NCBI RefSeq assembly: GCF_003704095.1
Contig: NW_020847472.1
Location: 372,092-436,000, forward strand
Length of the DNA: 63,909 nucleotides
Direction: 5' to 3'
DNA from: Pocillopora damicornis
Taxonomy: Eukaryota
Every line of letters starts with the position of its first letter. Position 1 is the stretch's first letter. Both the position numbers and the translations under genes were made by a program. Shown here in pieces: positions 39,938-62,270 of the stretch. Below the pieces are notes generated by a model, which had not been told where the DNA came from, did not search any database, and saw only the letters and a list, made by a program, of their open reading frames with translations.

Positions 39938-42900
39938 TTAGAAATGATAACGCAGACACACGGTTCTTCGTAATAGTCTGAGGCAGTAGTACGGCACTCG
40001 TATGACTTGAGATAAGGCCGCAAGCACTACCAGGATGCAGGCTATAGCTGGTAGAAAGCCAAGCAAAGCGACTTCCATCCACTCCAACGCGTAAAAAAGG
40101 TTCTCTCTTGGTCCAGTAGGCTCGAGTCCCTGGGCGATAAGGGTGACTTCTGCCAAGTTGAAAGTGCAAATAGCAACAAGACTCATAAGAGAAAGGGCTT
40201 CACATATGTTGGCCTTACGGTCACGAAATGGTCTCGACACAAGATGATGCACCAGAGTTACAACACATGCGAAATCCAAACAGATGAATCGCGTTAAAGG
40301 ATCAGTGATGAAGTTACGAATGGTCAGTAGTAGGAACCTCCGACCGGTCAGCACACTCTCCCAGTACAATGTACCATGGTCATCACCACAGGGTGGACGG
40401 AATGGATCATGGAGAACTTTCTTAATTTCTTCGGCATCGTGGGTATTCCCCCAAAACAGTTCAAACCCGTGAAAACTTGGTTTCTTGAAAACGTAGCGAT
40501 AGAGCCAGATGAAAAGAAAGGGCAAAGGAAATGCACAGGAAGTCAAGAACTCCTTGGCTGACAATTTGTCTTTGGAAAGCATCAGCGATCCCCAGAAGAG
40601 GACGAGCACAAGGGGAATAATAAATACCAAGATGAAGACAATTTGCATATACTGCCACCACTGCCAACAGGGGATGTTTCCATCTATGAACAGACGCCAC
40701 TCCCGCCCTACGGGAACGCAGTGCATGAGCTTCAGAGATGTATCTGCTAGGGTCTCGTAGCCTAGTAACAGGGTCTCCAGAACCACAGCCAGGTATAGTG
40801 TAAGGGAAGGTTTAGGAATGTGCCGGAACCGACTTATGACTCGATGGATGGCATAAATTATGGCAATGGAGAGCAACGTCGCTAAGAACTTCAAACACAA
40901 AAACAACTCTTTGGTGACAACATTGAAGCCAGGAAATGGGCATCCAATGCTGCCATTAATGGTCCGTATCTGGAAATTAAAGAGTGCAATGACTGGCGTA
41001 ACAAAAGGAACTATGTGAAGGGCTGCCTCAGGGGACTTGATCATCAGTATCTCAGCAACTTGATAAAAGTAGAAGATGGTCTTGAAATACCCGGCATCGT
41101 GTTCTTCATCGTTTCCTTCATGTGGTGCTGCCTGTCTTTGGCTGCTGTTGGATTTCTTTCTAAACCACAAGCATTGCCGGTACAGCCACGGGAAGATAGG
41201 CGGCTTGAAAACGAGGTAGAGAGACAACATTATTACGTAGATTAAACTCGCTATCCAAAACCAGTGATCATGGCATTTTTCTCTCTCTCGACAAGATGTG
41301 GAATATAAGTCTTCGCTGAATCCCTCAGTACATTGGCCGCATAAAACGCCTGTCCTGCTGCCATGGCAACCATTAAAAGCATAAGTATTAGGACGGGTAG
41401 GAGGTCGGCAGTATTCCAGTGGACAGGGATGAAACTCCAGCTTAGTTGATAGTGGTGAAGAGTAGCAGCCCCAAAAGTTTTCTTGGGCTTCGATGTCTCC
41501 ATTTTCACACGTCGCCCCGTAAGGACATTTAAGACATTTTGTTTCCTTGTGAATATCCAGACCACTGGAGGATCCTCTTTTTAAATTATAGAATCCATCC
41601 TGACACTCTCCACAAAAAAATGTGACATAAGCTACGCTTATCCAGCAAGTCTTACCCTCTCTAACAAGTTCGAAACCGGCTTGTCTGGCGATGTTTTCGA
41701 GCTTGATCTGTTTTCCATCTGGACATTTGAAGGAGGTCGAACTGTCGATCTTAATCGTATTGCTTTTCGTCACAGCAAAGATTGGATCGAATTCTTGATT
41801 AACGTCTGCTACAAAAGACGAATTTTGAATCTTTAACGGACCAGCGCTCTCGGATCTAAGAAAACAACCAACGGCTGACACGTTGGAATGACCTATCAAA
41901 CTTGTTTCGTTTTGCAGGAAGCTACAATTATTGATGTTCAGAATGCCGAAGCCTGTCTTCATATATACATGACCTCCCAAAGCCACTCCCTCATTGTTTT
42001 TAAATGCACAGTTCTTGATAGTGACGTTGCCATTCAAAAAGCTCAATGCTCCAGCGATGCCCACGTTGNNNNNNNNNNNNNNNNNNNNNNNNNNNNNNNN
42101 NNNNNNNNNNNNNNNNNNNNNNNNNNNNNNNNNNNNNNNNNNNNNNNNNNNNNNNNNNNNNNNNNNNNNNNNNNNNNNNNNNNNNNNNNNNNNNNNNNNN
42201 NNNNNNNNNNNNNNNNNNNNNNNNNNNNNNNNNNNNNNNNNNNNNNNNNNNNNNNNNNNNNNNNNNNNNNNNNNNNNNNNNNNNNNNNNNNNNNNNNNNN
42301 NNNNNNNNNNNNNNNNNNNNNNNNNNNNNNNNNNNNNNNNNNNNNNNNNNNNNNNNNNNNNNNNNNNNNNNNNNNNNNNNNNNNNNNNNNNNNNNNNNNN
42401 NNNNNNNNNNNNNNNNNNNNNNNNNNNNNNNNNNNNNNNNNNNNNNNNNNNNNNNNNNNNNNNNNNNNNNNNNNNNNNNNNNNNNNNNNNNNNNNNNNNN
42501 NNNNNNNNNNNNNNNNNNNNNNNNNNNNNNNNNNNNNNNNNNNNNNNNNNNNNNNNNNNNNNNNATAAGACTGTTTTTTACAACAAGCGTTTGGTCGCCC
42601 GTTGAACAATACCGAGCCGTATTATCTAAGCAAGTGGTCGTTGACATCCTTATGCCAATCCGGTTGTCCACCAAGACGCACCTTTCAAGGAAGACCTTTA
42701 CACCTGGCGCTTTAATGGATGTTTTAGGGGGAGCACTGGCCATGATAGCATACCCGTATGTGGAATGAACCGTTACGTAAGTCAAATTTACTCCAAACCC
42801 GCCGTGCACAAAGACAGAATTTTCGTTGTTAAGAAACGACGTGTTTAATAATGATACATTCCCATCGCCAAAGAGGTTGTCAACTCTTACGGATACAGCG

Positions 42901-43894
42901 AAGCTGTTGTCTTTATGGCCCAGGTCTTGGAAAATAGAGTTAGTAATTGAGACTAAGACACGAATAGGATACGTTATAACTGGACTAGCTTGAGAACGGA
43001 CAAACACGGCACCTTTTATACTTCTATCATCATTTGTAACATGAAATCGTCCCCTCGCGTCCTGGAAAAGACATCTTGATATGGTCATCTCAAAGAAGTC
43101 GTTAGGGAACTTGACAAGAATAGATTTTGCATTATACCGGAATTTACTATCAGTGGCTACAAAACTACTCTTTTCACGGACGTAGTCAATCTCATTCCAG
43201 AACACACCAACGGCTGCCTTAGAGAAGTTGAAAAACTTGCATTTGGCGATGACGATATCAAAGGAGGACACATTGACGAGGGCTACACCATACGTGCCAT
43301 TGTCGAAAAGAAGGTTTGAGAGAGAAACTTTGACGGAGCCGATTTTGAACTTTGGACCAAATTCTATGCTGAATGTGTTGTTGCGGAATTCACTATCAGA
43401 AACCTCAAGTGAAGACTTTTGATCGATGAAAGAAGAAACCTGACTTCCTTCCCACAACATGAAAATGGCCCTCGTGCAATTGATAAATTTGCAATTGGAG
43501 ATGACGACATCATAAGAAGGCACATTGAACAAAACTAATCCATACCTGCTATTATTGAATACAAGGTTTGAGAGAGAAACCTCGACAGAACCATATTTCG
43601 ACCTTGATGCAAATACTAATCCACATGAAATGTGTGCCGGGGAGGATACACCCTGTATCGATACACTTTTCCCCACAGCTCTCAATTTCGTTCCATTGGG
43701 ACCAACCGTTTTCAAACATTCGTATGGATTTGACTCACTGTTTGTCCCATTGAGGCAAATTTTGCCACCACTGTTCACTAGAAGTAGCGCTTGTGGTAAT
43801 GTCCGGCAGGGCACAGCAAAAGAGCCACATTGAGGGGAGTCTTCACCGCTGAGATGGGATACGTAAAGACAATCACTCTCCTGGTCTTCTGCAC
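39938..43894 (-). CDS. Beta-helix / Cys-rich / multi-pass transmembrane protein, copy A (large coding exon, interrupted only by an N gap; signal exon not in the assembly)
   Basis: Acceptor TCTTTAG at 43895. N-terminal YVS..GEDSPQCGS..VPCRTL..AL cap, then ISNCKF/FxxN/GG repeats of pectin-lyase-like beta-helices. CxxCPxGAxC, CPxxYC and CxGxRTGVLCGxC follow, then about 9-11 hydrophobic helices with YWE...RR and PF....N..E motifs. The frame is consistent if the gap equals the 417 nt seen in copy B. Confidence 0.85.
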
Positions 43895-46267
43895 CTAAAG
43901 ATAACGGAAGTTTCTTACAACAACGTGGAATTCAGTTGTAAAACGATGTAAAGTTAAGTAGGTGCTTTGGATGTAATAGGCGCAAAAATTTCGAAAGACT
44001 ACTATTTCGTTGCAAACTGCCAGAGTGGCACATGCATGCATGCTTTCTGGACAGATGCCACCACCATAGAAATAATTATCAAGCTCTTACGGACCAAACG
44101 TNNNNNNNNNNNNNNNNNNNNNNNNNNNNNNNNNNNNNNNNNNNNNNNNNNNNNNNNNNNNNNNNNNNNNNNNNNNNNNNNNNNNNNNNNNNNNNNNNNN
44201 NNNNNNNNNNNNNNNNNNNNNNNNNNNNNNNNNNNNNNNNNNNNNNNNNNNNNNNNNNNNNNNNNNNNNNNNNNNNNNNNNNNNNNNNNNNNNNNNNNNN
44301 NNNNNNNNNNNNNNNNNNNNNNNNNNNNNNNNNNNNNNNNNNNNNNNNNNNNNNNNNNNNNNNNNNNNNNNNNNNNNNNNNNNNNNNNNNNNNNNNNNNN
44401 NNNNNNNNNNNNNNNNNNNNNNNNNNNNNNNNNNNNNNNNNNNNNNNNNNNNNNNNNNNNNNNNNNNNNNNNNNNNNNNNNNNNNNNNNNNNNNNNNNNN
44501 NNNNCTAAAGGCAACAAAACAGGGTCGAAATAGTTCTGTTTGTTTTCAGTCTCGTGAAAGTTGAGAAACTTGGCACTTATAGCAGCGTTTTGCAGTTAGA
44601 CAGATCAATATCAAGGTAGCATACTTGACATAAATGATGGAAGACGGTTGAAAATGGACAAATGGAAGATTAACACCGTTACTACTCCCTTCGATCTGAG
44701 AGGATTGATGTAACTTAGGAGAGAACTAGTTTTTCCACCTCAGTATCCTTCATGAAAATACGCGCAACTGCTAAAGCAGTGGATAGCGTGGAAGGTGCGC
44801 TTTGATTAGCAACTCAGACTCCGAGTATCCTTTGCTTTTCACCTCCGTGCAACGCCGCAGGATTTACGCCCGAAAATACTGTTATCGCTGCAGGAATAAA
44901 TGAGTTAAAGTTATCTCCTTTGTGCTATATGATCTCACTATCTTAGTAAGCGGCTCGGCAATTATCCACCGCTACATATCTCAACCTCGGTGAACAGTAG
45001 TTAATTATTTCAATACACACAGAACATACTTGAAAAAGTCAATGTCATGTGAAAGATGTAAACGCAGTTAAGTTAAACGCCGAATAAATCGGGACAGTGT
45101 AAAGTTTTTTACTTGTTTGTTGGTCATGTGATGGGAAAGCTCTCTATCGGAACATTACCTACTTTCCAAAGTAGATTCCAATTACATCGTCATCTCACCA
45201 GATGGTTTTNNNNNNNNNNNNNNNNNNNNNNNNNNNNNNNNNNNNNNNNNNNNNNNNNNNNNNNNNNNNNNNNNNNNNNNNNNNNNNNNNNNNNNNNNNN
45301 NNNNNNNNNAAAAATCACTCAAAATTTCCTGTCATAGCTCAAGCACGCCAAATTTGAACATGGAAGCAGAACATTCTTCGTTGCATGTATCCGAAGTACA
45401 TTCGAGAAGCCGGCAGCACGCTATATGTACTGTTTGAAGCTTTATTTATTCTGAAAGATACCGTGCTTTTTTATCTCAAGTAAAAATACCATACTTTTAA
45501 AGAGCTAATTCACGGTCTTTTCCTCCGCAATTTGCCTTAAAAATTTACAGGCTTGGGTTGACCTCCTCCGTCGTTAGTTAACAATATTTGTTACCTTTTT
45601 TACGTTTTTTCCTTCTTACGTAACTTATATTTTGTTATCATCTTTAAGTTGACGATTGCCGCCCTTCGCAAATAATTACACCGACTGATGTGACGTGATG
45701 CCTCTAATATTGTCATGACTCTGCAAAATTTTGACACTGAAATAGATTTTGAATGTAAAGTTTTCACATTAAATGTTTCCCGTGCCAAACTTAATGTTTT
45801 GATTGATATCCATTTCAAAAATCCTTGTTTCCTTACTGACAAGGCCCTCAAATAAACAACACTCCAACTCAAGCTTTGGCATTGCTCTCCGAACTGCAGT
45901 GTCAATACATTCCAAAACGGCTCTTTCGTTTGGTTCACCGCCTGATTAACCTCAGTCCTAAATTTTTCTTTATTTCCTTTATGAAAAAACAATTCTTCTC
46001 TCTGGAATGCACGTTCTAATATCTCACCCATAAGTTAAGGTTTTCATTTTGCCGAAAACTTTCGTGTTTCTTTGTTTTTTCCTTTTTTTGCTCACCCAAG
46101 CAGAAGTATTGTCCAAAAATAACTTACAAAGTTGTTATCAATATTATTATCGTTTAGTTTTTTTTACATCAGTACCCATGGTGATCAATGAATATATAGC
46201 AGCGGTTAAGGAACAAAGTGTATCAGATTTATACGACAGAGCAGTTCCGAGCAGTTTCGCGCTCACT

Positions 46268-46340
46268 ATGATGTATTCGCTGCTGTGCCTCTCATTTTCT
46301 GAGTTATTTTCTTTAATTCTTCTTGTTATACGCTCTACTG
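46268..46340 (+). CDS. Signal-peptide exon of the beta-helix/TM family (copy B)
   Basis: MMYSLLCLSFSELFSLILLVIRST followed by a G|GTAAGT phase-1 donor, matching the phase-1 acceptor of the large exon. Confidence 0.7.
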
Positions 46341-47677: not shown

Positions 47678-49870
47678 GTGGTGAAGAACAAACCAATGAA
47701 TGTATCTACGTATCCCATCTTGGCGGTGAAGACTCGCCTCAGTGTGGTTCCTTTGCTGTGCCCTGTCGAACATTACCACAAGCGCTACTCCTGATCAATG
47801 ATGGTGGCAAAATTTGCCTCAACGGAAAAGATAGTGAGTCAAATCCACGAATGTTTGAAAACGGATAGTCCTAATGGAACTGAATTCAAAACTATAGAAA
47901 AAAGTGTATCAATACAAGGTGTGTCCTCCCCGGCACATATTTCATGTGGCTTAATATTTGCGCCGAGGTTCAAGTATGGTTCCTTCTCAAACCTAGTATT
48001 CAACAATACTAGGTATGGATTAGTTTTCTCCGATGTGCCCTTTTATGATGTTGTCATTTCCAAATGCAAGTTTATCAATTGCCAGAAGGCCGTTTTTATG
48101 CAATGGGAAAGGAATTTTTCACGCATTCGTGAGAGATCTTTACTCGAAGTTGCTGATAGCGAATTTCGCAATACTTCATATGGCATAGAATTTGGTCCAA
48201 GGTTCAGGAATAGTTTTGCTGAGGTTTTCCTGTCAAACCTTATGTTCGGCAATGGCACGTATGGTTTAGTCCTCGCCAATGTGTCCTCCTATGATATCGT
48301 CATCACCAAATGCAGGTTTTTCAACTTCCATAAGGCAGCCGTTGGTATCTTATGGAATCAAATAGATTTCGTCATTCCTGAAAAGTGTAGTCTTGTAGCC
48401 ACTGATGGCGAATTCCGATACAATGCAAAATCTATAGCTGTCAAGTTACCTAACAGTATCGTTGAGACGACCATATTAAGATGCTTCTTCGAGGGCGCGA
48501 AGGGACGTTTTAATGTGACATCTTTTGATAGAAATTTAACAGGTGCCGTGATAATCCGTTCACAAGCTAATTCAATTATAACGTATCCAATTCATGTATT
48601 TGTCTCAATCACTGACTCTATTTTCCAAGAGCTCGGCCATAAAGACAACAGCTTCGCTGTATTAGTAAGAGTTGACAACCTCTTTGGCGATGGGAATATA
48701 TCATTGTTTAACACGTCGTTTCTTAACAACGAAAATTCTGTCTTTGTCCATGGCGGGTTTGGCCTTAATTTGACTCACGTGACGGTTACTTCCACCTATG
48801 GGCATGCTATCATGGCCAGTGCTCCCCCTAAAACATTAATTAAAGCACCTGGTGTTAGGGTTTTCCTTGAAAAGTGCGTCCTAGTGAACAACCGGATTGG
48901 CATAAGAATGTCAAAGACTACTTGCTTAGATAATACGGATAGGTATTGTTCAACGGGCGACCAAACGCTGGTTGTAAAAAACAGTCTTATACTGGGAGGT
49001 AATGAAACATTAGGCACTGGTGATGCAATCAGATTTGGAATGAGTTTCCCTAAACAGAACTATACCCGTGCGGTCTTGAAACCAGGCAAAGAAACAGTAT
49101 ATTTGTCGCCAAATTTAAAAGCAAAACTACTTCTTGAAAACGTCACTTTCCATGGGTTACATGACTGTGCGCTGTCTGTTAGTACAGAAAAAAACGTACT
49201 AGGGCTCATCTCGGTGAAAAATTGCAGATTTTTCGACAACACCCAGTTTGTGAATCGACTATATGAACGAGGAACTATCCAAATTGAATTTCCGAACGAC
49301 GATCCGCCGAAATGTCCACGTGCAACAAAAGGAAACGAAAGTAAGGAACTGGTCTGGGACAAAAAGTCGGAGCTACCGGTTATGATTGAAGATACTTTAT
49401 TTGAAAACAACGTGGGCATCGCTGGAGCATTGAGCTTTTTGAATGGCAACGTCACTATCAATAACTGCGCATTTAAAAACAACAAGGGAGTGGCTTTGGG
49501 AGGTCATGTATATATGAAGACCGGTTTCGGCATTCTGAACATCAATAATTGTAGCTTCCTGCGTAAAGAAACAAGTTTGATAGATCATTCCCGCGTGTCA
49601 GCTGCTGGTTGTTTTCTTAGATCCGAGAGCGCTGGTCCGTTAACGATTCAAAATTCGTCGTTTATAGCAGACGTTAATCAAGAATTCCATCCAATCTTTG
49701 CTGCGACGAAAAGCAGTACGATTAAGATCGACAGTTCGACCTCCTTCAAATGTCCAGACGGAACACAGATCAAGCTCGAAAACATCAACCTTAGAGGAAG
49801 TGAGACTTGTTGGATAAGCGTAGCTTATGTCAAATTTTTTTGTGAAGAGTGTCAGGATGGATTCTATAAT
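47678..49870 (+). pseudogene. Beta-helix/TM family copy B: disabled and 3'-truncated
   Basis: The acceptor aligns as CAA|GT rather than TAG|GT. There is a 2-nt deletion near 47846 (CCA-CGAA vs CCA-TACGAA). After DGFYN (49870) the sequence jumps to the 3' flank of copy A (~39625), a ~2-kb deletion removing all TM helices. A 700-codon frame remains open. Confidence 0.75.
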
Positions 49871-52196
49871 GTCCGACAAATACACTATTTGTTAAAGTAA
49901 ATAATAGCATTTGTTTTCAGTTCTCCTTGTTGATATATTATCACTTTGCAACGAAAAACTTTTGATTTGCAAGTTATGGAAAACTACGTAGGTTTAAGAG
50001 CTAAGCTTGCATCATTCTGGACATTAAGAGTCCTCAGAAAACTTAGTAAAATGAAAACGATGAGGCATCGGGTACTAAAAGGTAGAATTTCTTGGTCATT
50101 TGTGGGACTGTGTCCTCCGTTAGATAACCATTTTTCACTCTTAGTTAACACATTTTTCCATTCTGCTAAGATATTGTTTTTTTCGAGGTGCCAATAAAAC
50201 CACATTTTGAATTTATTCTTTAGAATCGCTTCTTTCCAGCTTCAAAATTATCAACGAATTTTTTAACGATTGAACGATTTTGATCAAAATATTCTCCATG
50301 ATTGAACCTTTAATTGAGCCCTACATAAGAATCACTTTAATGAGAGGCAGATCACTACAATTTGCCTATGCTGGGCGCTTGAGCTCAACCTCATTTGTAG
50401 CTCACATTTGTAGATAGCACAAAAGTCTCTGGGCCAATAAATACGATATTTTTAGGGTAACAAAGGAGATCCCGTGGGAGACCGTTCCACTTCAGTGACA
50501 TTTTTCTTACGTTAGCGAAAAATTCTTTGTTGTACTGATGATTTTATTATGTTGTTAGAAACGGTCTGGAGAGTTCTGATCCCTCTTAGTCCATGTTAGT
50601 TGATAGACATCGATAGACAGAAGGGTCAATAATGCGGCGATTGCTTTCGAAAGTTCCTTTTCGCTCCTCACACCACTTTCCATTTTGCTTCTGTTTTTAA
50701 TTCAATGACCAATATACGTACCTTGTTCGGATATTGCAAAGTTATTTCTCCAGTCATGAAAAATCTCATTTGCATAAAAAATACTCTGTCTCACAAGAAC
50801 TTCTCAGCTATTGCTTAAACTGACTCGTAACAAAATATTAAATGAAGTAAACGTTTTAAAAATAGGATGGCGCCTTGTGTGGTTTTGGTTTTTGTTTTTT
50901 CCCCTCTCTGATATAACGTTACCGTCTAATCACGTGCAGGTAAGGTTTTTGATATAGGATACAATACGTGGGTGTAATTTCTTAGTGTTAGCGAAAGAGC
51001 CATTATTCGATAGGCTTCTATATTCAGTTAGTAGAAATCTACTTGCGTTCTCAAATACTGCGATCTGATTGGCTGCGCTACTCGATATTTAATCCGTAAT
51101 AGCGTGTGTGTAGCCCGACAGTGTTTGGTTGTAAACAAAATATAACAAAAAAATTGACTTGTCATTTTGTTTAGTTTTGTACAATGAGAAGGCTTGTACT
51201 AAAACAATTAATTATTCGCTATTTTTAATATGCGCAATGGTTGATTGGGGCCGGTTCTACTTTTTCAACCATCGCTCGATAGAAATCTCGAGACAAAAAT
51301 TGCTCTCCTTAGACCTTAAGATACAGCGAAATGATGTCTTTGTATAGTTGTACTTTACAATCGGAAAAAAAGCTGTGTATTAGTTAAATATTCATGCACA
51401 GCTTTCCAAACCTTTTACAATGAATTCTGCTACGGGCGGAATTTTCTTAGCTCTACTCCAGTAAATCTCTTTCCATATTAATGGCGGGCAGAGATTTAGT
51501 TTTAGGGTTTCGTCAACATATGGTTATGCAACATGAAAGAAATATTGACATCCACCCGACAAGTGGCGATCAAAGGACCTCGCTTTCATCGACCCTGCTG
51601 CGCTTGAAATTTCTGCGAGTGAATTTCTTTCCATTCTAGAGAACCGGAACCTACAGTACCCCATGCAACCGTGGCATCCACGTTCGTTTTATTCACGCTG
51701 AAAATTAAGCCTGAAATTCCCGACTTTGTCAACTCAGATTGGTTTCAAATGCCCTCAGTTCTCAGCCATCTTTGTTCCCTCTTGCTTTCGTATGGCCTCT
51801 TTTGTGTCATACCGTCCGTCCGTAGTAAGATTTTTTTCAAAGTGTTCATTAAAAAGGAAGTCAGTGGTTTTACACATCAAAAAGTCACTCACAATTTCCT
51901 ATTTCCTCTATGAAAGAAACGATTCTTCTCTCTGGAATGCACGTTCTAATGTCTCACCCATAAGTTAAGGTTTTCATTTCGGTTAAAACTTTCGTGTTTG
52001 TTTGTTTTTTCTTCTTTTGCTCACCCAAGCAGAAGTATTGTCCAAAAATAACTTACAAAGTTGTTATCAATATTATTATCGTATAGTTTTTTTTCCTCGA
52101 GTACCCATGGTGATCAATGATTACATAACAGCGATTAAGGAACAAAGTGTATCAGATTTATACGACAGAGCAGTTCCGAGCAGTTTCGCGCTCACT

Positions 52197-52269
52197 ATGA
52201 TGTATTCGCTGCTGTGCCTCTCATTTTTTGAGTTGTTTTCTTTAATTCTTCTTGTTATACGCTCTACTG
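52197..52269 (+). pseudogene. Orphan signal-peptide exon (copy D); large exon absent
   Basis: Same exon and intron sequence as the other copies, but at ~54157 the intron runs directly into the 866-bp repeat before reaching the acceptor. Confidence 0.65.
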
Positions 52270-55200
52270 GTAAGTAAATTTTTGCAAAGTTTCCTTTAAC
52301 CTCTTTCAGTGGAAAAAGTTTCTGTAATCTCGTTTCAAGGTTATAGTTTAATATCAGCTTTCAAGGCCTGTGGAACGGAGTAGTCAACTGAAATTTACTT
52401 AAGCCAGTGTTGGACTTATTTTTAAGGTTGACAACACACATTTGAGCATCCCATTCGTATCCACGCATGTTTTTTACATTCAAAACAATAGAGTTTTGGA
52501 TATTAAGGGTAAGTTTTGTAATTGTGTATTACCTTAGGATATGATTGTTTCTGAACATTTCGCTCAGTCCTCGGAGTCCTAAATAATTGCGGGCAAAAAC
52601 GCACACTGGTCATGATTTCTCAGGAACCAAAAGCAAACACGATTTGTGTTTTAAAATCTGAGATTTATGAATTCTTCATGTTTTGGACTAACCAGTTCCA
52701 GAAGCTTGCTAAACCGGACACAGAAATTAGCGGCCAGTTGTTATATGGATCCTAACTAAAATAAATCAAAGTTTCAATAGAGTTTTGGTATCCTTGTCAA
52801 ATTAAGGAATACATTTGTTCACTTTCGTCATCACATGACCAACAAACAAGTAAAAAACCTTACACTGTCCCAATTTATTCGGCGTTTAACTTAACTGCCT
52901 TTATACCTTTCACGTCATATCGATTTTTTCAAATGTGTTTTGTGTCTGTTGAAATAATTAACTACTGTTTCCGAAGTTGAAATATGTAGAGGTGGATAAT
53001 TTCCGAGCCGCTTACTGAGACAGTGAGATCATATAGCACAAAAGAGATAACTTTAACTCATTTATTCCTGCAGCGATAACAGTATTTTCGGGTGTAAATC
53101 CTGCGGCCGTTGCTCGGAGGTGTAAAGCAAAGGATACTCGGAGTCTGAGTTGCTAATCAAAGTGCACCTTCAACGCTATCTACTGCTTTAGCAATTGCGC
53201 GTATTTTCATGAAGGCGAGGGGGAAAAACTAGTTCTCTCCTAAGTTACATCCATCCTCTCTCAGATCGAAGGGAATATTAAAGGTGTTAATCTCCCATTT
53301 GTCCATTTTCAACCGTCTTCCATCATTTATGTCGAGTATGCTCGCCTACAAATATTGATCTGTCTAACTACAAAACGCTGCTATAAGTGCCAGGTTTCTC
53401 AACTTTTACGAGACTGAAAACAAACAAAACTATTTTGACCCTGTTTTGTTGCCTTTAGTAATGACGATTAGCATTTCATCAGGATAATGAAAAATAAAAA
53501 CCATCTAGTGAGATAACGACGTAATTGGAATCTACTTGGAATATAAGTAATGTTCCGTTTAAGAGCTTTTCTAGGTAATCCAACGTATATTAATTTATTT
53601 ACTCCTGCCCAGGTAAGTTAGATTTTTGTTGGCTAAGTTATTCCTCATTGCTAACCGTGAGGTTTTCCCCCTCCAATTGCGTAATGTTTTGTAAACAGAC
53701 TAAAAATTTCTTGATTATCTAAAAGGTAAGATACAAGATATCAATGCAATACGTGTCACTTTGGGGCTAATAAAATATAATATATAATATATTGTGTTTG
53801 GCTCGATTCCAATGAAACTGTTTTTTTTTCTCGATTTCTGTGCTGCCGTTTACCTTGTGTTTACTCAAAGAAAGAGGCCGACAGCTCTCGGGTGAATGGT
53901 ATACAATTTGCTCTTTTGTCATAGCCTTTATTACAGTTAAATTCCCACTGACTGTGCACTACCGAAGAACTATGACAAACAAGAAATTTATGTCGATTCT
54001 AGTCTTCAAGGGAGATTCGATATGAGTAACTGACGATATGGATTTGTGCCAAATTTCAGATACTGCACAGGAATATACTCGATTATTTCAGCTTTCTTGC
54101 TTCTAAAATAAATATCGTATGATGACTAATGACGTTTGGTTTGTAAGAGCTTCATAATTAAATGACCTTGCTTTCGGATGCGGTTTCGACCTAAATTTCT
54201 GCGACTTAAATCGATTAAATTGCTCTCCTTAGACCTTAAGATACAGCGAAATGATTTATTTGTATAGTTGTACTTTACAATGGAAAAAAAAGCTGTGTAT
54301 TAGTTTAATATTCATGTACAGCTTTCCAAACCATCTGTAATTAATTCTGCTACGGGCGGAATTTTCGTAGCTCTACTCCAGTAAATTTATTTCCATATTG
54401 ATGGCGGGCATGGAGTTAGTTAAGTTCAGTCGTCAACATTTGGTTATGCAACATGAAAGAAATATTGACATCCACTCAACAAGTGTTGAGCAAACGACCT
54501 CGCTTTCATCGACCGTGCTTGGCTTGAAATTTCTGCGACTTTGCTTCACTCGAGTAAATTTCTTTCCAATCTAAAGAACCGGAACTTACAGTATCCCATG
54601 CAACCGTGGCATACACGTCCATTTTATTCATGCTGAAAATTAAGCCTGAAAATACCAATTTTGTCAGCTCAAATTGGTTTTAAATGTTCTCAGTTCTCAG
54701 CCATCCTTGTTCCCTCTTGCTTTCGTATGGCCTCTTTTGTGTCATTCCGTCCGAGTTAACGTAGTAAGATTTTGTTTAAAGTGTTCATTAAAAGGTAGTC
54801 AGTGGTTTTACACATCAATAAAATCACTCACAATTTCCTGTCATAGCTCAAGCACGCCGAATTTCAACACGGAATCAGACCATTCATGTATCCGAAGTAT
54901 GTTCGAGAAGCCGGCAGCACGCTATATGTACTGTTTTTTCTCTATTCTGAACATACCCTGCTTTTTTATCTCAAGTAAATATACCTTACTTTAAAGAGCT
55001 AATTCACGGTTTTTTCTTCCGCAATTTGCTTTAAAGTTTTATAGGCTTGGGTTGACCTTCTCTGTCGTTAGTTAACTATATTTATTACCTTTTTCATGTT
55101 TTTTCCTTCTTACGTAAGTTATATTTTGCTATCATCTTTAAGTTGACGATTGCCGCCCTTCGCAAATAATTACACCGACTGATGTGACCTGACGTCTCTT

Positions 55201-56592
55201 ATATCGTCATAACTCTGCAAAATTTTGACACTGAAATAGATTTTGAATGTAATGTTTTCACATTAAATGTTTCACTTGCCAAAACGTAATGTTTTAATTG
55301 ATATCCGTTTCAAAAATCCTTGTTTTCTTACTAACAAGGCCCTTAAATAAACAGCACTTCAACTCAAGCTTTGGTATTGTTCTCCGAACGCCAGTGCCAA
55401 TACATTCCAAAACGGCTCTTTCGTTTGGTTCACCGCCTGATTAACCTCAGTCCTGAATTTTCCGTTATTTTCTTTACAAGAAAAACGATTCTTCTCTCTG
55501 GAATGCACGTTCTAATTTCTCACCCATAACTTAAGGTTTTCATTTTGTCGAAAACTTTCGTGTTTGTTCGTTTTTTTCTTTGTTAGCTTACCCAAGCAGA
55601 CGTATTGTCCAAAAGTAACTTACAAAGTTGTTATCAATATTATTATCGTATAGTNNNNNNNNNNNNNNNNNNNNNNNNNNNNNNNNNNNNNNNNNNNNNN
55701 NNNNNNNNNNNNNNNNNNNNNNNNNNNNNNNNNNNNNNNNNNNNNNNNNNNNNNATTCTGAAAGATACCGTGCTTTTTTATCTCACGTAAAAATACCATA
55801 CTTTTAAAGAGCTAATTCACGGTCTTTTCTTCCGCAATTTGCCTTAAAACTTTACAGGCTTGGGTTGACCTCCTCCGTCGTTAGTTAACTATATTTATTA
55901 GCTTTTTCATGTTTTTTCCTTCTTACGTAACTTATATTTTGTTGTCATCTTTAAGTTGACGAATGCCGCCCTTCGCAAATAATTACACCGACTGATGTGA
56001 CGTGACGTCTCTAATATCGTCATGACTCCANNNNNNNNNNNNNNNNNNNNNNNNNNNNNNNNNNNNNNNNNNNNNNNNNNNNNNNNNNNNNNNNNNNNNN
56101 NNNNNNNNNNNNNNNNNNNNNNNNNNNNNNNNNNNNNNNNNNNNNNNNNNNNNNNNNNNNNNNNNNNNNNNNNNNNNNNNNNNNNNNNNNNNNNNNNNNN
56201 NNNNNNNNNNNNNNNNNNNNNNNNNNNNNNNNNNNNNNNNNNNNNNNNNNNNNNNNNNNNTGATTAACCTCATTCCTGAATTTTTCGTTATTTCCTTGAT
56301 GAAAAAAACGATTCTTCTCTCTGGAATACACGTTCTAATATCTCACCCATAAGTTAAGGTTTTCATTTTGTCGAAAACTTTCGTGTTTCTTTGTTTTTTT
56401 CTCTGTTAGCTCACCTAAGCAGAAGTGTTGTCCAAAAATAACTTACAAAGTTGTTATCAATATTATTATCGTACAGTTTTTTTTTTACATCCAGTACCCA
56501 TGGTAATCAATGAATATATAACAGTGGTTAAGGAACAAAGTGTATCAGATTTATACGACAGAGCAGTTCCGAGCAGTGTCGCGTTCATTGTG

Positions 56593-56662
56593 ATGTATTC
56601 GCTGCTGTGCCTCTCATTTTCTGAGTTATTTTCTTTAATTCTTCTTGTTATACGCTCTACTG
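56593..56662 (+). CDS. Signal-peptide exon upstream of copy C
   Basis: MYSLLCLSFSELFSLILLVIRST followed by G|GTAAGT. The first ATG of the other copies is GTG here. Confidence 0.6.
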
Positions 56663-58300
56663 GTAAGTAAATTTTTGCAAAGTTTCCTTTAACCTCTTTC
56701 ATTAGAAAAAGTTGCTGTGATGTCGTTTCAAAGTTAAAGTTTAATATCAGCTTTCCAGGCCTGTGAAACGGAGTAGTCAACTGAAATTTACTTCAGCCAG
56801 CGTTGGACTTATTTTTAAGATTGACAACACACATTTGAGCATCCCATTCGTTTCCACGCATGTTTTTTCCATTCAAAACAATAGAGTTTTGAATATTAGG
56901 GTTAAGTTTTGTCGGTGTGTATTACCTCATGATATGATTGTTTCTGAACACTTCTCTCAGTCCTCGGAATCCTAAATCATTGCGGGTAAAAACACACGCT
57001 GGTCATGATTTCTCAGGAACCAAAAACAAACACGATCTGAGATTTATGAATTCTTCATGTTTTGGTAAGCACAAATCAGTTCCAGAAGCTTGCTAAACCG
57101 GACAAAGAAATTAGCGGCCAGTTGTTATATTGATCCTAACTAAAATAAATCAAAGTTTCAATAGAGTTTTGATATCCTTGTCAANNNNNNNNNNNNNNNN
57201 NNNNNNNNNNNNNNNNNNNNNNNNNNNNNNNNNNNNNNNNNNNNNNNNNNNNNNNNNNNNNNNNNNNNNNNNNNNNNNNNNNNNNNNNNNNNNNNNNNNN
57301 NNNNNNNNNNNNNNNNNNNNNNNNNNNNNNNNNNNNNNNNNNNNNNNNNNNNNNNNNNNNNNNNNNNNNNNNNNNNNNNNNNNNNNNNNNNNNNNNNNNN
57401 NNNNNNNNNNNNNNNNNNNNNNNNNNNNNNNNNNNNNNNNNNNNNNNNNNNNNNNNNNNNNNNNNNNNNNNNNNNNNNNNNNNNNNNNNNNNNNNNNNNN
57501 NNNNNNNNNNNNNNNNNNNNNNNNNNNNNNNNNNNNNNNNNNNNNNNNNNNNNNNNNNNNNNNNNNNNNNNNNNNNNNNNNNNNNNNNNNNNNNNNNNNN
57601 NNNNNNNNNNNNNNNNNNNNNNNNNNNNNNNNNNNNNNNNNNNNNNNNNNNNNNNNAATCTCCCATTTGTCCATTTTCAACCGTCTTCCATCATTTATGT
57701 CGAGTATGCTACTTTGATATTGATCTGTCTAACTGCAAAACGCTGCTACAAGTGCCAAGTTTCTCAACTTTTACGAGACTGAAAACAGGCAGATCTATTT
57801 CGACCCTGTTTTGTTGCCTTTAGCAATGACGATTAGCATTTCATCAGGATAATGAAAAATAAAAACCGTCTGGTGAGATGACGACGTAATTGGAATCTAC
57901 TTGGAAAATAAGTAATGTTCCGTTAAAGAGCTTTCCTGGGTTAACCAACGTATATTATTTAATTTACTCCTGCCGAGGTAAGTTTAATTTTTGTTGGCTA
58001 AGTTATTCCTCATTGTTAACCGTAGGGATTTTCCCTTCCAATTACGTAATGTTTTGTAAACAGACTGAAAATTCCTTGATCATCTTAAAGATAAGATACA
58101 AGATATCAATGCAATACGTGTTCTCTTTGAGGCTAATAAAATATAATATATAATATCGTGTTTGGCTCGATTCCGATGAAACTTTTTCTCGGTTTCTGTG
58201 CTGCCGTTTACCTTGTGTTTACTCAAAGAAAGAAGCCGACAGCTCTCGGGAAAATGGTGTACAATTCGTTTTTTTGTTATAGCTTTCATTACAGTTAGAT

Positions 58301-59184: not shown

Positions 59185-59381
59185 GTGCGGAAGACCAGGG
59201 TAGTGATTGTCTCTACGTATCCCACCTCAGCGGTAAAGCCTCAATGTGGCTCTTTTGCTGTGCCCTGCCGGACATTACCACAAGCGCTACTTCTAGTAAA
59301 TCTACGTAATAATGTTGGCTCTCTACTTCGTTTTCAAGCCGCCTATCTTCTCGTGGCTGTTTCGGCAATGCTTGTGGTTTA
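59185..59381 (+). pseudogene. Internally deleted beta-helix/TM family copy (N-terminal cap joined directly to the TM1 region)
   Basis: Intact acceptor at 59184 and a 5-nt deletion relative to copy A near 59235. At ~59298 the sequence jumps from LLLVN to aatctacgtaataatgttg (TM1), about 2.5 kb further on in copy A. Confidence 0.75.
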
Positions 59382-59481
59382 NNNNNNNNNNNNNNNNNNN
59401 NNNNNNNNNNNNNNNNNNNNNNNNNNNNNNNNNNNNNNNNNNNNNNNNNNNNNNNNNNNNNNNNNNNNNNNNNNNNNNNNN

Positions 59482-61689
59482 CTCCCTAACGACTTCTTTG
59501 AGATGACCGTATCAAGATGTCTTTTCCAGGGTACGAAGGGACGATTTCATGTTACAAATGATAATAGAAGTATAAAAGGTGCCGTGTTTGTCCGTTCCCA
59601 AGCTAGTTCCGTTACGACGTATCCTATTAATATCTTAGTCTCAATTACTAACTCTATTTTCCAAGACCTGGGCCATCAAGACAACAGCTTCGCTGTATCC
59701 GTAAGAGTTGACAACCTCTTTGGCAATGGGAATATATTATTATTCAACACGTCGTTTCTTAACAACGAAAATTCTGTCTTTGTCCATGGCGGATTTGGCC
59801 TTAATTTGACTCACGTGACGGTTACTTCCACTTATGGGTGTGCTATCATGGCCAGTGCTCCCCCTAAAACATTAATTAAAGCACCTGGTGTTAGGGTTTT
59901 CCTTGAAAAGTGCGTCCTAGTGAACAACCGGAATGGCATAAGGATGTCAACGACTACTTGCTTAGATAGTACGGAGGCCTTTTGTTCAACGGCCGACCAA
60001 ACGCTTGTTGTAAAAAGCAGTCTTATACTGGGAGGTAATGAAACATTAGGCACTGGTGATGCAATCAAATTTGAAATGAGTTTCCCTAAATATAACGATA
60101 GTCGTGCGGTCTTGAGGCCAGGTAAAGAAGAAGTATATTTGTCGCCAGATTTTGAAGGAAAACTACTTCTTGAAAATGTCACTTTCCACGGGTTACATGG
60201 CTATGCACTATCTTTTAGTACAGAAAAAAACGTACGAGGGCTCATCTCGGTGAAAAACTGCAGATTTCTCAACAACACCCAGTTTGTGAATCGACTATAT
60301 GAACGAGGAACTATCCAAATTGAATTTCCGAACGACGATCCGCCAAAATGTCCACGTGCATCAAAAGGAAACGAAAGTAAGGAACTGGTCTGGGACAAGA
60401 AGTCGGAGCTACCGGTTATAATTGAAGATACTTTATTTGAAAACAACGTGGGCATCTCTGGAGCATTGAGCTTTTTGAATGGCAATGTCACTATCAAGAA
60501 CTGTGCATTTAAAAACAATGAAGGAGTGGCTTTGGGAGGTCATGTTTATATGAAAACAGGTTTCGGCATTCTGAATATCAATAACTGTAGCTTCCTGCAA
60601 AAAGAAACAAGTTTGATAGATCATTCCCGCGTGTCAGCCGTTGGTTGTTTTCTTCGATCCGAGAGCGCCGGTCCGTTAAAGATTCAAAATTCGTCCTTTG
60701 TAGCAGACGTTAATCAGGAATTCGATCCAATCTTTGCTGCGACGAAAAGCAATACGATAAAGATCGACAGTTCGACCTCCTTCAAATGTCCAGATGGAAA
60801 ACAGATTAAGCTCGAAAACATCGAACTTGTCAGAGGAAGAGAGACTTGCTGGATAAGCGTAGCTCATTTAAAATTTCTTTGTGAAGAGTGTCCGGATGGA
60901 TTCTATAATTTAAACAGAGGATCTTCCAGTGGTCTGGATATTCACAAGGAAACAAAATGTCTTAAATGTCCTTACGGGGCAACGTGTGAAAATGGAGACA
61001 TTAAAGCCCAAGAAAACTTTTGGGGCTGCTACTCTTCACCACTGTCAACTAAGCTGGAGTTTCATCCCTGCCCACTGGAATACTGCAAACCTCCTACCCG
61101 TCCTAATACTCACGCTTTTAATGGTTGCCATGGCAGCAGGACAGGCGTTTTATGCGGCCAATGCGCTGAGGGATTTAGCGAAGACTTATATTCTACATCT
61201 TGTCGAGAGAGAGAAAAATGCCATGATCACTGGTTTTGGATAGCGAGTTTAATCTACGTAATAATGTTGTCTCTCTACCTCGTTTTCAAGCCGCCTATCT
61301 TCCCGTGGCTGTATCGGCAATGCTTGTGGTTTAGAAAGAAATCCAACAGCAGCCAAAGACAGGCAGCGCCACATGAAGCAAACGATGAAGAACACGATGC
61401 TGGATATTTCAAGACCATCTTCTACTTTTATCAAGTTGCTGAGATACTGATGATCAAGTCCCCTGAGGCAGCCCTTCACATAGTTCCTTTTGTTACACCA
61501 GTCATTGCACTTTTTAATTTCCAGGTACGGACCATTAATGGCAGCATTGGATGCCCATTTCCTGGCTTCAATGTTGTCACCAAAGAGCTGTTTTTGTGCT
61601 TGAAGTTCCTGGCGACATTGCTCTCCATTGCTATGATTTATGCCATCCATCGAGTCATAAGTCGGTTCCGGCACATTCCTAAACCTTCC
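59482..61689 (+). CDS. Beta-helix/Cys-rich/TM family copy C, internal fragment bounded by 100-N gaps
   Basis: Uninterrupted frame from LPNDFFEM to RHIPKPS, highly similar to copies A and B. Confidence 0.8.
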
Positions 61690-61789
61690 NNNNNNNNNNN
61701 NNNNNNNNNNNNNNNNNNNNNNNNNNNNNNNNNNNNNNNNNNNNNNNNNNNNNNNNNNNNNNNNNNNNNNNNNNNNNNNNNNNNNNNNN

Positions 61790-62270
61790 TTGCTCTCCAT
61801 TGCCATGATTTATGCCATCCATCGAGTCATAAGTCGGTTCCGGCACACTCCTAAACCTTCCCTTACACTATACCTGGCTGTGGTTCTGGAGACCCTGTTA
61901 CTAGGCTACGAAACCCTAGCAGATACATCTCTGAAGCTCATGCACTGCGTTCCTGTAGGGCTGGAGTGGCGTCTGTTCATAGATGGAAACATCCCCTGTT
62001 GGCAGTGGTGGCAGTACATGCAAATTGTCTTCATCTCGGTATTTATCATTCCTCTTGTGCTCGTCCTCTTCTGGGGATCACTGATGCTTTCCAAAGACAA
62101 ATTGTCCGCCAAGGAGTTCTTGACTTCCTGTGCATTCCCTTTGCCTTTTCTTTTCATCTGGCTCTATCGCTACGTTTTCAAGAAACCAAGTTTGCCCGAG
62201 TTTAAACTGTTTTGGGGGAATACCCACGATGCCGAAGTAATTAAGAAAGTTCTCCATGATCCATTCCGTC
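61790..62270 (+). pseudogene. TM-domain fragment of the same family, truncated after LHDPFR
   Basis: The first ~70 nt re-copy 61618-61689 (contig overlap). Homology to copy A stops at ~62268, so the last TM helices (YWE... onward) are missing. The downstream sequence matches the reverse complement of ~34300-35900. Confidence 0.7.

What the first reader, a model, noticed from the sequence alone, without database searches (positions are those of the whole stretch)
39938..62270. Tandem birth-and-death array of an uncharacterised beta-helix / Cys-rich / multi-pass membrane receptor
Seen: a cassette made of the 866-bp repeat, upstream region, 73-nt signal-peptide exon, intron and one ~3.9-kb exon is repeated at least four times. 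The predicted ~1,300-aa protein has an extracellular parallel beta-helix with FxxN/GG motifs, a Cys-rich stalk and ~9-11 TM helices. One copy looks intact; the others are frameshifted or deleted. Established: beta-helices commonly bind polysaccharides or act as adhesins, and FxxN/GGA repeats typify chlamydial Pmp adhesins. Inference: a rapidly turning-over surface receptor family, a candidate for glycan sensing, symbiont or pathogen recognition, or allorecognition. I know of no functional name for it.
Basis: partly seen in the sequence, partly recalled or inferred. Interest (0 to 1): 0.8.

Follow-up and report, generated by a model that had tools for sequence, protein, structure and literature searches.

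The report
Coral beta-helix multi-pass receptor gene array
A Pocillopora coral locus holds one working, expressed copy and several decayed copies of an unstudied surface protein that joins a polysaccharide-binding-type beta-helix to a strongly conserved, possibly channel-like membrane domain. The family is large and widespread, but its function is unknown.

Summary
The observation mostly holds. The genome is Pocillopora damicornis-like (234 Mb), and the window holds three copies of a ~3.9-kb exon.

- **Copy A (minus strand)** is open on both sides of an assembly gap. It is transcribed in polyA RNA of three studies, and RNA contigs join it to the 73-nt signal-peptide exon.
- **Copy B** has a shifted acceptor and a frameshift, and it lacks the stalk and membrane domain.
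- **A third cassette** keeps only the signal exon and part of the intron.
- **Copy C** is broken mainly at scaffold gaps, so its decay is partly an assembly artefact.

The ~1,316-aa protein has four parts: a signal peptide, a right-handed beta-helix, a Cys-rich stalk and a ~430-aa multi-pass domain.

- The beta-helix is supported by Pfam PF13229 and by an AF2 model (pTM 0.83) that matches tailspikes and polysaccharide lyases.
- The stalk gives sub-threshold DUF7630 and DUF7631 hits.
- The multi-pass domain has no Pfam or PDB match.

That membrane domain defines at least 2,534 clusters at 50% identity. Distant members carry true Chlam_PMP repeats. Weak, convergent leads tie the domain to PF06011 "TRP" (fungal Pkd2/Flc).

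A long-read P. meandrina assembly has four paralogues within 115 kb, so the array is real. dN/dS is 0.06 in the membrane domain and 0.35-0.46 in the N-terminal helix. The ligand and function remain inferred.

Another first-reader note (s1-770034) records a paralogue on other DNA of this genome.

The parts
39938..43894 (-). Copy A, large exon 2. The CDS runs from 43894 down to 39941, with the stop codon at 39938-39940. It is interrupted by assembly gap 42069-42564. The existing partial annotation is pdam_00005651.
   Evidence: Both sides of the gap are open and align to P0008 residues 4-454 and 595-1297. It is 99% identical to P0042. PolyA RNA contigs cover 39858-43895 at 97% identity or more.
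43895..45209 (-). 3' part of copy A's intron, including gap 44102-44504. The acceptor AG ends at 43895. The signal exon and promoter of A are not assembled.
   Evidence: RNA depth falls from about 258 to about 2 at 43895. The loose end at that point is the reverse complement of the signal exon's 3' end. 44505-45139 matches intron 52822-53458 in inverted orientation.
45311..46267 (+). Upstream repeat unit and putative promoter/5' UTR of cassette B.
   Evidence: Matches 54820-55654, 55755-56028 and 56261-onward at 90-95%. It occurs only in this contig.
46268..46340 (+). 73-nt signal-peptide exon of cassette B: 24 codons plus 1 nt, with donor GTAAGT.
   Evidence: The phase fits exon 2 and the signal peptides of the Oculina and Montipora RefSeq models.
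47679..49897 (+). Copy B, a pseudogene remnant of exon 2. The acceptor is shifted by 1 nt, there is a frameshift near 47840, and the copy is truncated after residue 752, so it has no stalk or membrane domain.
   Evidence: 49875-50633 continues as A's 3' flank. The same truncated ORF occurs in other samples as P0052, P0053 and P0045.
51297..51900 (+). Unit of the 866-bp locus-specific repeat, lying between B's 3' flank and the next cassette. A second unit is at 54217-54839. Inverted tandem copies lie at 30232-30855 and 31098-31721.
52197..52269 (+). Signal-peptide exon of the third cassette. It is followed by intron remnant 52270-54160 and has no large exon.
   Evidence: The sequence from 50634 to 55654 is contiguous, with no N.
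54820..56589 (+). Upstream repeat units of cassette C, with gaps 55655-55754 and 56031-56260. The unit appears about twice.
56590..56662 (+). Signal-peptide exon of cassette C. The first ATG has changed to GTG, but the second ATG at 56593 is kept and the donor is intact.
59185..59298 (+). Start of copy C's exon 2 (residues about 5-49), with a frameshift near 59233.
59299..59381 (+). Misplaced 83-nt duplicate of 61251-61333, abutting gap 59382-59481.
59482..61689 (+). Copy C, an open stretch of 736 codons (residues 274-1009): beta-helix, stalk and the first membrane helices.
   Evidence: It is 99.3% identical to the intact ORF P0001 from another sample. It is a mosaic of A-like and B-like tracts.
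61790..62269 (+). Copy C, residues 986-1145. It overlaps the previous piece by 24 codons across gap 61690-61789. Similarity to the gene ends at 62270.
   Evidence: A C-type 3' end (99.6% to P0001) lies outside the window at G000:C4107:436854-437579.

Best explanation
This is a real, locally duplicated cluster of paralogous two-exon genes in a Pocillopora coral. The genes encode a ~1,316-aa multi-pass surface glycoprotein.

**Domain order**
- A signal peptide, encoded on its own 73-nt exon.
- A right-handed parallel beta-helix of about 730 aa, of the Pmp/pectate-lyase kind.
- A stalk of about 150 aa with 13 cysteines, resembling DUF7631/DUF7630 and ephrin-receptor repeats.
- A multi-pass domain of about 430 aa with about 10 helices and a short basic tail.

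**What is shown**
- The array evolves by birth-and-death with gene conversion.
- Copy A is intact as far as it is assembled, and it is spliced and transcribed.
- Copy B is a pseudogene.
- One cassette has lost its large exon.
- Copy C looks broken largely because of scaffolding.

**What is inferred about mechanism**
- The variable N-terminal beta-helix binds an extracellular glycan or surface ligand.
- The highly constrained membrane domain carries out the conserved activity. This domain belongs to a eukaryote-wide module of a Cys-rich stalk plus a PF06011-like 'TRP' domain, the domain of fungal Pkd2/Flc putative Ca2+-permeable channels.
- The most likely activity is ligand- or force-dependent ion flux, rather than G-protein or kinase signalling.
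For: **Gene structure and expression**
- Signal exons.
- Acceptors.
- RNA contigs from 4 polyA or oligo-dT runs in 3 studies cover A's exon only. Two of them (X1, X2, one study) carry the signal-exon sequence joined at 43895.

**State of the copies**
-.

**The array is real**
- Four annotated paralogues lie on one strand within about 115 kb of a 7.5-Mb P. meandrina contig.
- The own genome gives 34 matches, clustered on C4107, C2827, C900 and C4371.

**Beta-helix**
- PF13229 scores 36.7-48 bits against a cut-off of 25.9.
- The AF2 model has pLDDT 83.7 and pTM 0.83.
- Foldseek matches tailspike depolymerases, the K1 capsule lyase, AlgG, chondroitinase B and pertactin, 12 of them at E<=1e-3.
- N-glycosylation sequons number 18 against 9.2 expected.

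**Membrane domain**
- The AF2 model has pTM 0.72.
- dN/dS is 0.064, against 0.21 for the stalk and 0.35-0.46 for the N-terminal helix.
- A profile of the domain finds 2,534 clusters at E<=1e-3.

**Link to PF06011**
- 12 of the 30 nearest Atlas clusters carry PF06011, with scores of 0.93-0.94. The list also includes algal clusters with Ephrin_rec_like plus TRP, and a cnidarian DUF7630 cluster.
- hhalign against the coral's short DUF7630 family gives probability 76% and E 2e-5 over 288 columns, with matching motifs.
- That short family reaches 26.4 bits on PF06011, against a cut-off of 28.5.
- S. pombe Pkd2 has the analogous plan of signal peptide, ectodomain, Pfam TRP domain and tail (PMC6727746). 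Its Ca2+ permeability is activated by membrane stretch (PMC9727806).
Against: - No member of the beta-helix subfamily itself hits PF06011, even at E<=10.
- The link rests on a two-step chain of sub-threshold matches and on language-model features. The tool's own notes say such features can mislead.
- No ligand, localisation or ion flux has been tested.
- The topology (9 full helices plus a re-entrant one, or 10-11 helices) is inferred from AF2 helices and the positive-inside rule only.
- Copy A's integrity depends on about 417 unassembled nucleotides.
- Contigs cannot give expression level or cell type.
Confidence: 0.6

Rival explanations
1. The protein is a membrane-anchored polysaccharide-degrading or -modifying enzyme. 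The beta-helix would be a lyase, hydrolase or epimerase, and the multi-pass domain would anchor it or move its products.
For: The closest solved folds are enzymes: phage depolymerases, K1 capsule lyase, the AlgG epimerase, chondroitinase B and fucoidan lyase. There are also Pfam hits to the pectate-lyase-like PF12708 at 27-29 bits.
Against: TM-scores are only 0.2-0.33 and sequence identity is 8-12%, so no active site can be transferred. Adhesins such as pertactin and Pmp share the fold. The fast-evolving N-terminal helix (dN/dS 0.35-0.46) fits binding diversity better than a fixed active site.
Confidence: 0.15
2. The protein is a polymorphic self/non-self or symbiont-recognition receptor. Copy number and ectodomain alleles would differ between individuals.
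For: Many 89-96% variants of the same gene occur in Pocillopora holobiont assemblies (P0002-P0019). There are gene-conversion mosaics. The ectodomain is less constrained than the membrane domain. The family is expanded in tandem.
Against: dN/dS is below 1 in every segment. The variants come from unnamed samples that may be different species. There is no link to any fusion or rejection locus or to symbiosis. The family also occurs far outside colonial animals.
Confidence: 0.15
3. Much of the apparent array and decay is an assembly artefact, produced by unmerged haplotypes and mis-oriented or misplaced contigs in a short-read scaffold. The true locus would hold fewer, mostly intact genes.
For: There is a 24-codon overlap across gap 61690-61789. 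An 83-nt piece is misplaced at 59299-59381. There is a jump back after gap 55655-55754. C's 3' end lies 2.5 kb further on, outside the window. The block from 29.7 to 45.2 kb is bounded by gaps and would fit the tandem pattern if flipped. All four P. meandrina genes lie on one strand.
Against: The copies differ by 6-20% and show dS of 0.12-0.42, too much for alleles. B and the cassette without a large exon lie in gap-free sequence. B's truncation recurs in other samples. A long-read relative keeps four genes.
Confidence: 0.1

Closest known systems
Fungal Pkd2/Flc 'TRP-like' proteins (Pfam PF06011), for example S. pombe Pkd2
   Same: The overall plan is the same: signal peptide, extracellular domain, large multi-pass domain and cytoplasmic tail (PMC6727746). 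Weak sequence and feature similarity to PF06011 appears directly and through the coral's short DUF7630 family.
   Different: The window's protein gives no PF06011 hit. Its ectodomain is a beta-helix plus a Cys-rich stalk, where Pkd2 has an ML-like domain. Its tail is short and basic, where Pkd2's tail is a coiled coil. Channel activity is untested.
Chlamydial polymorphic membrane proteins (Pmp; Pfam PF02415 repeats)
   Same: Both have a beta-helical passenger-like ectodomain with recurrent FxxN. Distant family members with the same membrane domain score up to 1e-32 on Chlam_PMP. Both are multigene families.
   Different: The protein is eukaryotic. It is anchored by an alpha-helical multi-pass domain, whereas Pmps use an autotransporter beta-barrel. 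GGA(I/L/V) is not enriched, and the coral copies give no Chlam_PMP hit.
Short DUF7630 proteins of the same coral (at least 20 loci, ORFs of 500-630 aa) and algal Ephrin_rec_like+TRP proteins
   Same: They share the Cys-rich stalk and a homologous multi-pass domain, with motifs of the FYQ, C..GL, W.WE...R(R/K) and P..D..(A/E)N types aligned.
   Different: They lack the ~730-aa beta-helix. They reach DUF7630's cut-off, which the window's protein does not (17-25 bits against a cut-off of 27).
Phage tailspike depolymerases and bacterial polysaccharide lyases or epimerases (right-handed beta-helix fold)
   Same: These are the best structural matches of the ectodomain model. Pfam Beta_helix and pectate-lyase-like hits agree.
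   Different: The similarity is at fold level only (TM-score 0.2-0.33, identity 8-12%). They are not membrane proteins, and no catalytic residues could be assigned.

Membership tests
Right-handed parallel beta-helix (Pfam Beta_helix PF13229 / pectate-lyase-like) | Pfam hit above the curated cut-off | tested here: met
   PF13229 scores 36.7 bits on copy B and 48 bits on the orthologue P0008, against a cut-off of 25.9. PF12708 scores 27.3-29.4 bits against a cut-off of 27.
Right-handed parallel beta-helix (Pfam Beta_helix PF13229 / pectate-lyase-like) | Predicted fold is a beta-solenoid that matches solved beta-helices | tested here: met
   The AF2 model of 59482-61299 has pLDDT 83.7 and pTM 0.83, with regular three-strand coils. 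Twelve PDB matches at E<=1e-3 are all beta-helix proteins.
Chlamydial Pmp (PF02415) | Repeated FxxN and GGA(I/L/V) motifs, with a Chlam_PMP Pfam hit | tested here: inconclusive
   FxxN occurs 10 times against 4.2 expected (8 of 2,000 shuffles reach this). GG[AVILF] occurs once against 1.2 expected. The window's copies and close orthologues give no PF02415 hit. Distant members give hits from 3e-5 to 5e-32.
Chlamydial Pmp (PF02415) | C-terminal autotransporter beta-barrel | tested here: not met
   The C-terminal 430 aa are predicted to be all-helical and membrane-spanning.
PF06011 'TRP' (fungal Pkd2/Flc) | Pfam hit above the cut-off on the membrane domain | tested here: not met
   No hit at E<=10 for copy A or for the 10 paralogues aligned with it in A1. 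The sister short family reaches 26.4 bits against a cut-off of 28.5, with E 4e-6.
PF06011 'TRP' (fungal Pkd2/Flc) | Remote homology by profile or feature comparison | tested here: inconclusive
   Atlas features score 0.93-0.94, and 12 of 30 nearest clusters carry PF06011. hhalign of A1 against A5 gives probability 76% and E 2e-5. A direct profile-profile test against PF06011 was not possible.
PF06011 'TRP' (fungal Pkd2/Flc) | Ca2+-permeable, stretch-activated channel activity | not testable with these tools
   This activity is known for S. pombe Pkd2 only (PMC9727806).
DUF7630 / DUF7631 (Cys-rich modules) | Pfam hit above the cut-off (27 bits) | tested here: not met
   DUF7630 scores 17.3-24.6 bits and DUF7631 scores 10.6-13.9 bits, at the expected stalk positions.
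GPCRs (7TM families) | A 7TM Pfam hit or a structural match to a solved GPCR | tested here: not met
   There is no 7TM Pfam hit on copy A's membrane domain; one of its ten aligned paralogues gives a weak stray hit to GPR_Gpa2_C at E 0.0086. GPCR chains appear in Foldseek only at E 0.24 or worse, with TM-scores of 0.11-0.22.
Polycystin-1 / PKD-REJ type receptors | GPS, PLAT, REJ or PKD_channel domains | tested here: not met
   None appear in the Pfam scans of full-length orthologues.

The most novel reading that the evidence does not exclude
The stalk-plus-multi-pass module may be an unrecognised, eukaryote-wide class of surface channel-receptors, distantly related to fungal Pkd2/Flc. Corals would have fused it to a Pmp-type beta-helix and expanded it in tandem arrays. 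Binding of a microbial or algal glycan, or mechanical pull on the long beta-helix, would then gate ion flux directly. That would be a new kind of innate sensing receptor in cnidarians.
Probability: 0.2. Interest if true: 0.8.

Novelty: new variant of a known kind. Interest (0 to 1): 0.55.

Why it matters
Corals rely on surface recognition of microbes and symbionts. Their genomes are known to be shaped by tandem duplication of receptor genes (PMC10236652), but that paper's text does not mention a beta-helix family.

- **Size and neglect of the family.** The membrane domain defines at least 2,534 clusters at 50% identity. It has no Pfam model for this subfamily, no solved structure and no literature that I could find.
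- **Strong constraint.** dN/dS of 0.06 shows that the domain does something important.
- **Possible mechanism.** If the domain is a Pkd2/Flc-like channel coupled to a glycan-binding beta-helix, it would be a directly testable new sensing mechanism. It would also give the fungal 'TRP-like' family its first animal relatives.
- **Use of this locus.** The window gives a compact natural series: one intact copy, one truncated copy and one copy reduced to its first exon and part of the intron. This could be used to study gene birth, death and conversion in corals.

Tried and rejected
**Searches that found nothing**
- Pfam at E<=10 on the membrane domain of copy A and the 10 paralogues aligned with it gave nothing for A and only stray hits for the others. 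NCBIfam on the orthologue P0008 gave nothing.
- PDB sequence searches with copy A and with profiles A1 and A5 gave nothing meaningful.
- Foldseek against the PDB with the membrane model gave a best E of 0.12. Hits were ABC exporters, class B GPCRs and others, with TM-scores of 0.2 or less.
- Literature searches found nothing for DUF7630/7631, for 'right handed beta helix' with coral, for the gene identifiers, or for eukaryotic multi-pass proteins under PF02415.

**Taxonomic range could not be established**
- Two cluster look-ups and two further word searches returned almost only unnamed ENA proteins.
- The one non-cnidarian label is a transcript from the euglenid Entosiphon sulcatum, 33-36% identical to coral proteins.
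- One ENA locus had no retrievable DNA.

**Readings rejected**
- Transposon origin of the repeats: they occur only in this contig.
- GPCR and polycystin-1 readings: see the membership table.

- I did not bridge or fill any N stretch.
- I did not send a read-through of any broken copy to a search tool. Exons and pieces were searched apart, by reference.
- From the contig ends at gap 42069-42564 I used only their length and reading frame.

- Expression of B and C could not be tested, because only one read-laying run is allowed.

Full report
**Source and layout**

The window is G000:C4107:372092-436000 of a 234-Mb assembly in 4,393 contigs. Its proteins are 92-99% identical to Pocillopora meandrina and P. 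damicornis proteins. Copy A is the annotated partial gene pdam_00005651.

A stop-to-stop ORF scan and self-BLAST show three copies of one large coding exon:

- A at 39941-43894 on the minus strand.
- B at 47679-49897 on the plus strand.
- C at 59185-62269 on the plus strand.

A scan for ATG + 73 nt + GT found the signal exon at 46268-46340 and 52197-52269. It encodes 24 hydrophobic codons plus one base and is followed by GTAAGT. A third copy lies at 56590-56662. Its first ATG is now GTG, but a second ATG follows.

The phase (one base carried over) fits the acceptor ...TTTAG|GT of A and C. It also fits the signal peptides of the RefSeq models from Oculina and Montipora.

The repeats around the genes occur only in this contig. 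The 866-bp period is exact at 30232/31098, in inverted orientation. Single units lie at 51297-51900 and 54217-54839.

**Gaps (tested first, as asked)**

*Gap 42069-42564, inside A's exon*

- tblastn with the intact P. meandrina orthologue P0008 (1,297 aa) places residues 4-454 on one side and 595-1297 on the other.
- So 140 codons, or 417 nt beyond the partial codons, should be hidden. The 496 N are only an estimate, and the coordinate frames differ.
- PolyA RNA contigs run on into the gap from both sides, by 297 and 150 letters in run X1. Their first codons stay in frame and follow the orthologue.

*Other gaps*

- 44102-44504 and 57185-57656 lie in introns. At 57185-57656 the flanks are colinear (472 N against about 489 nt expected); colinearity at 44102-44504 was not checked.
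- 56031-56260 lies in the upstream repeat of cassette C. Its flanks are colinear (230 N against about 222 nt expected).
- 45210-45309 joins an inverted intron to a direct upstream repeat. A's signal exon and promoter are therefore not assembled.
- After 55655-55754 the repeat unit jumps back by about 710 nt.
- Before 59382-59481 lies an 83-nt duplicate of 61251-61333.
- Across 61690-61789 the same 24 codons stand on both sides. Collapsing the overlap restores the frame.
- The last two gaps were not in the program's list.

**State of the copies**

*Copy A* is open throughout its assembled parts and ends at the orthologue's stop codon.

*Copy B* has three defects.

- Its acceptor AG is displaced by one base.
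- It has a frameshift near residue 63-65.
- It ends at residue 752. From there it continues directly into the sequence that follows A's gene (49875-50633 matches 39624-38869), so the stalk and membrane domain are deleted.
- After splicing, its reading frame would stop at 47792-47794 (read directly from the sequence).
- The same frameshifted start and the same truncated end occur in P0052 and P0053 from other samples, at 87% identity overall. P0045 is an in-frame truncated version with 93 member sequences. B is therefore an inherited state, not an assembly error.

*The cassette at 52197* has the exon and intron sequence up to about 54160, followed directly by the 866-type repeat. This is gap-free sequence, so its large exon is deleted.

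*Copy C* has a frameshift near 59233.

- Its main stretch (59482-61689) is 99.3% identical to P0001, an intact 1,214-aa ORF from another sample.
- A 3' end that is 99.6% identical to P0001 lies 2.5 kb beyond the break, outside the window, at C4107:436854-437579.
- C's decay is therefore partly a scaffolding artefact.
- C switches from A-like (93% against 72%) to B-like (96-100% against 86-88%) within 300 nt. This shows gene conversion and agrees with note s1-773093.

**Is the array real?**

- In the P. meandrina assembly GCA_942486045.1, four annotated paralogues lie on one strand between 2.099 and 2.211 Mb of a 7.5-Mb contig. Two of them are about 12 kb apart.
- That assembly appears to be the long-read one of PMC10236652. 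I matched it by species and contiguity, not by accession.
- In the own genome the membrane domain gives 34 matches. Clusters lie on C4107 (including further copies at 437 kb and 465-467 kb), C2827, C900 and C4371. About a dozen matches lie in open frames of 1,000-1,470 aa.
- The block from 29.7 to 45.2 kb comprises A, its 3' flank and the 866-bp repeats. It is bounded by gaps and mirrors the order found downstream of B.
- If the block were flipped, it would fit the tandem pattern. A's head-to-head orientation may therefore be a scaffolding error. I cannot decide this.

**Expression**

- Seven RNA runs on record, among 20 holders in 10 studies, contain A's C-terminal 2.1 kb.
- I laid four polyA, oligo-dT or cDNA runs from three studies on 39600-45209 at 97% identity or more.
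- Contigs tile 39858-43895. Depth falls from about 258 to about 2 at the acceptor, and the intron is empty.
- In two runs of one study, the contig end at 43895 continues with 28-45 letters. These are the reverse complement of the last bases of the signal exon.
- This is a splice junction, so the signal cannot come from contaminating DNA.
- Contigs cannot give expression level or strand. B and C were not tested.

**The protein: ectodomain and stalk**

- Pfam gives Beta_helix and pectate-lyase-like hits above their cut-offs.
- The stalk gives sub-threshold DUF7630 and DUF7631 hits.
- An AF2 model of residues 274-879 (pLDDT 83.7, pTM 0.83) is a right-handed beta-solenoid followed by small disulfide-rich modules and the first membrane helix.
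- Its PDB neighbours are tailspike depolymerases, polysaccharide lyases and epimerases, and pertactin. The match is at fold level only.
- FxxN and N-glycosylation sequons are enriched. GGA-type motifs are not.

**The protein: membrane domain**

- The last 430 residues have no Pfam, NCBIfam or PDB sequence match.
- Their AF2 model (pLDDT 72.5, pTM 0.72) has about ten long helices and a beta-hairpin with conserved cysteines.
- The model matches no solved fold convincingly.
- From the helices and the positive-inside rule I infer an N-out, C-in topology, with nine spanning helices and one re-entrant pair. This is inference only.

**The family**

- A profile of eleven paralogous membrane domains (A1) found 2,534 clusters at 50% identity with E<=1e-3, and 759 with E<=1e-30.
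- Distant members keep the same order of parts. They carry genuine Chlam_PMP repeats, up to 5e-32, plus DUF7630.
- Taxon labels are nearly all missing. One member is from a transcriptome of the euglenid Entosiphon.
- Atlas neighbours are clusters from ciliates, haptophytes, green algae and cnidarians.

**Link to PF06011**

- The coral also has at least 20 loci of a shorter family, 500-630 aa, that passes DUF7630's cut-off.
- That family consists of the stalk plus a multi-pass domain.
- Its multi-pass domain aligns to A1 by hhalign at probability 76% and E 2e-5, with the conserved motifs in register.
- Three of its 14 sampled members give sub-threshold hits to PF06011 'TRP'. The best is 26.4 bits against a cut-off of 28.5.
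- Language-model features point independently to PF06011, and to algal Ephrin_rec_like+TRP clusters.
- PF06011 is the membrane domain of S. pombe Pkd2. That protein has a signal peptide, an ectodomain, the TRP domain and a cytoplasmic tail (PMC6727746). Its Ca2+ permeability is activated by membrane stretch (PMC9727806).
- This is my basis for the channel-like reading. It is a lead, not a membership.

**Selection**

- Nei-Gojobori estimates between copies give dS of 0.12-0.42.
- dN/dS is 0.064 for the membrane domain, 0.21 for the C-terminal helix and stalk, and 0.35-0.46 for the N-terminal helix.
- Comparisons that involve B give 0.35-0.64; the highest values come from B against A's C-terminal helix (0.64) and B against C (0.47).
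- The membrane domain is therefore the conserved working part, and the tip of the helix is the variable part.
- Nothing exceeds 1, so diversifying selection is not shown.

**Verdict**

- 'Birth-and-death array' is supported, with two caveats: the scaffold exaggerates the decay, and the orientation of A is uncertain.
- The function (ligand binding by the helix, and a channel-like action by the membrane domain) is inferred.
- I found no publication on this family.
- Another first-reader note (s1-770034) records a 1,409-aa paralogue on other DNA of this genome. I did not test it.

Noticed in passing
window 29697-35913: This region holds inverted copies of the sequences that follow B and C. 33679-32065 matches 50593-51298, and 35913-34301 matches 62270-63604. 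It also holds tandem 866-bp repeats at 30232-31721. The whole block from 29.7 to 45.2 kb is bounded by gaps and may be flipped in the scaffold.
   Followed up: partly
G000:C4107:436854-437579 and 465582-466991 (outside the window): A C-type 3' end, 99.6% identical to P0001, lies 2.5 kb past the window's copy C. A further diverged copy (74% identity, 932-aa open frame, internally rearranged) lies about 30 kb on. The array therefore extends beyond the window.
   Followed up: partly
G000: C481:207240, C2282:970567, C790:133961, C812 (3 loci) and others; loci L032-L045: A second coral family with at least 20 loci and single-exon ORFs of 500-630 aa. It consists of a DUF7630 Cys-rich stalk plus a multi-pass domain homologous to the one studied here, without the beta-helix. 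Some members nearly reach the cut-off of PF06011 'TRP'.
   Followed up: partly
window 47795-49897, with P0045, P0052 and P0053: A truncated B-type ORF containing only the beta-helix recurs in other Pocillopora samples. One version is in frame and has 93 member sequences. It may be a secreted soluble form in some lineages and not just a dead gene.
   Followed up: partly
window 25714-26715 (minus strand): An intronless ORF of 334 aa for a rhodopsin-family GPCR (PF00001, E 1e-40).
   Followed up: partly
window 17672-18457 (plus strand): An ORF of 262 aa with leucine-rich repeats (LRR_6, E 5e-11).
   Followed up: no
P0121 (3,995 aa): A predicted protein with five separate matches to the membrane domain. 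It is probably several array members fused by gene prediction in another assembly.
   Followed up: no
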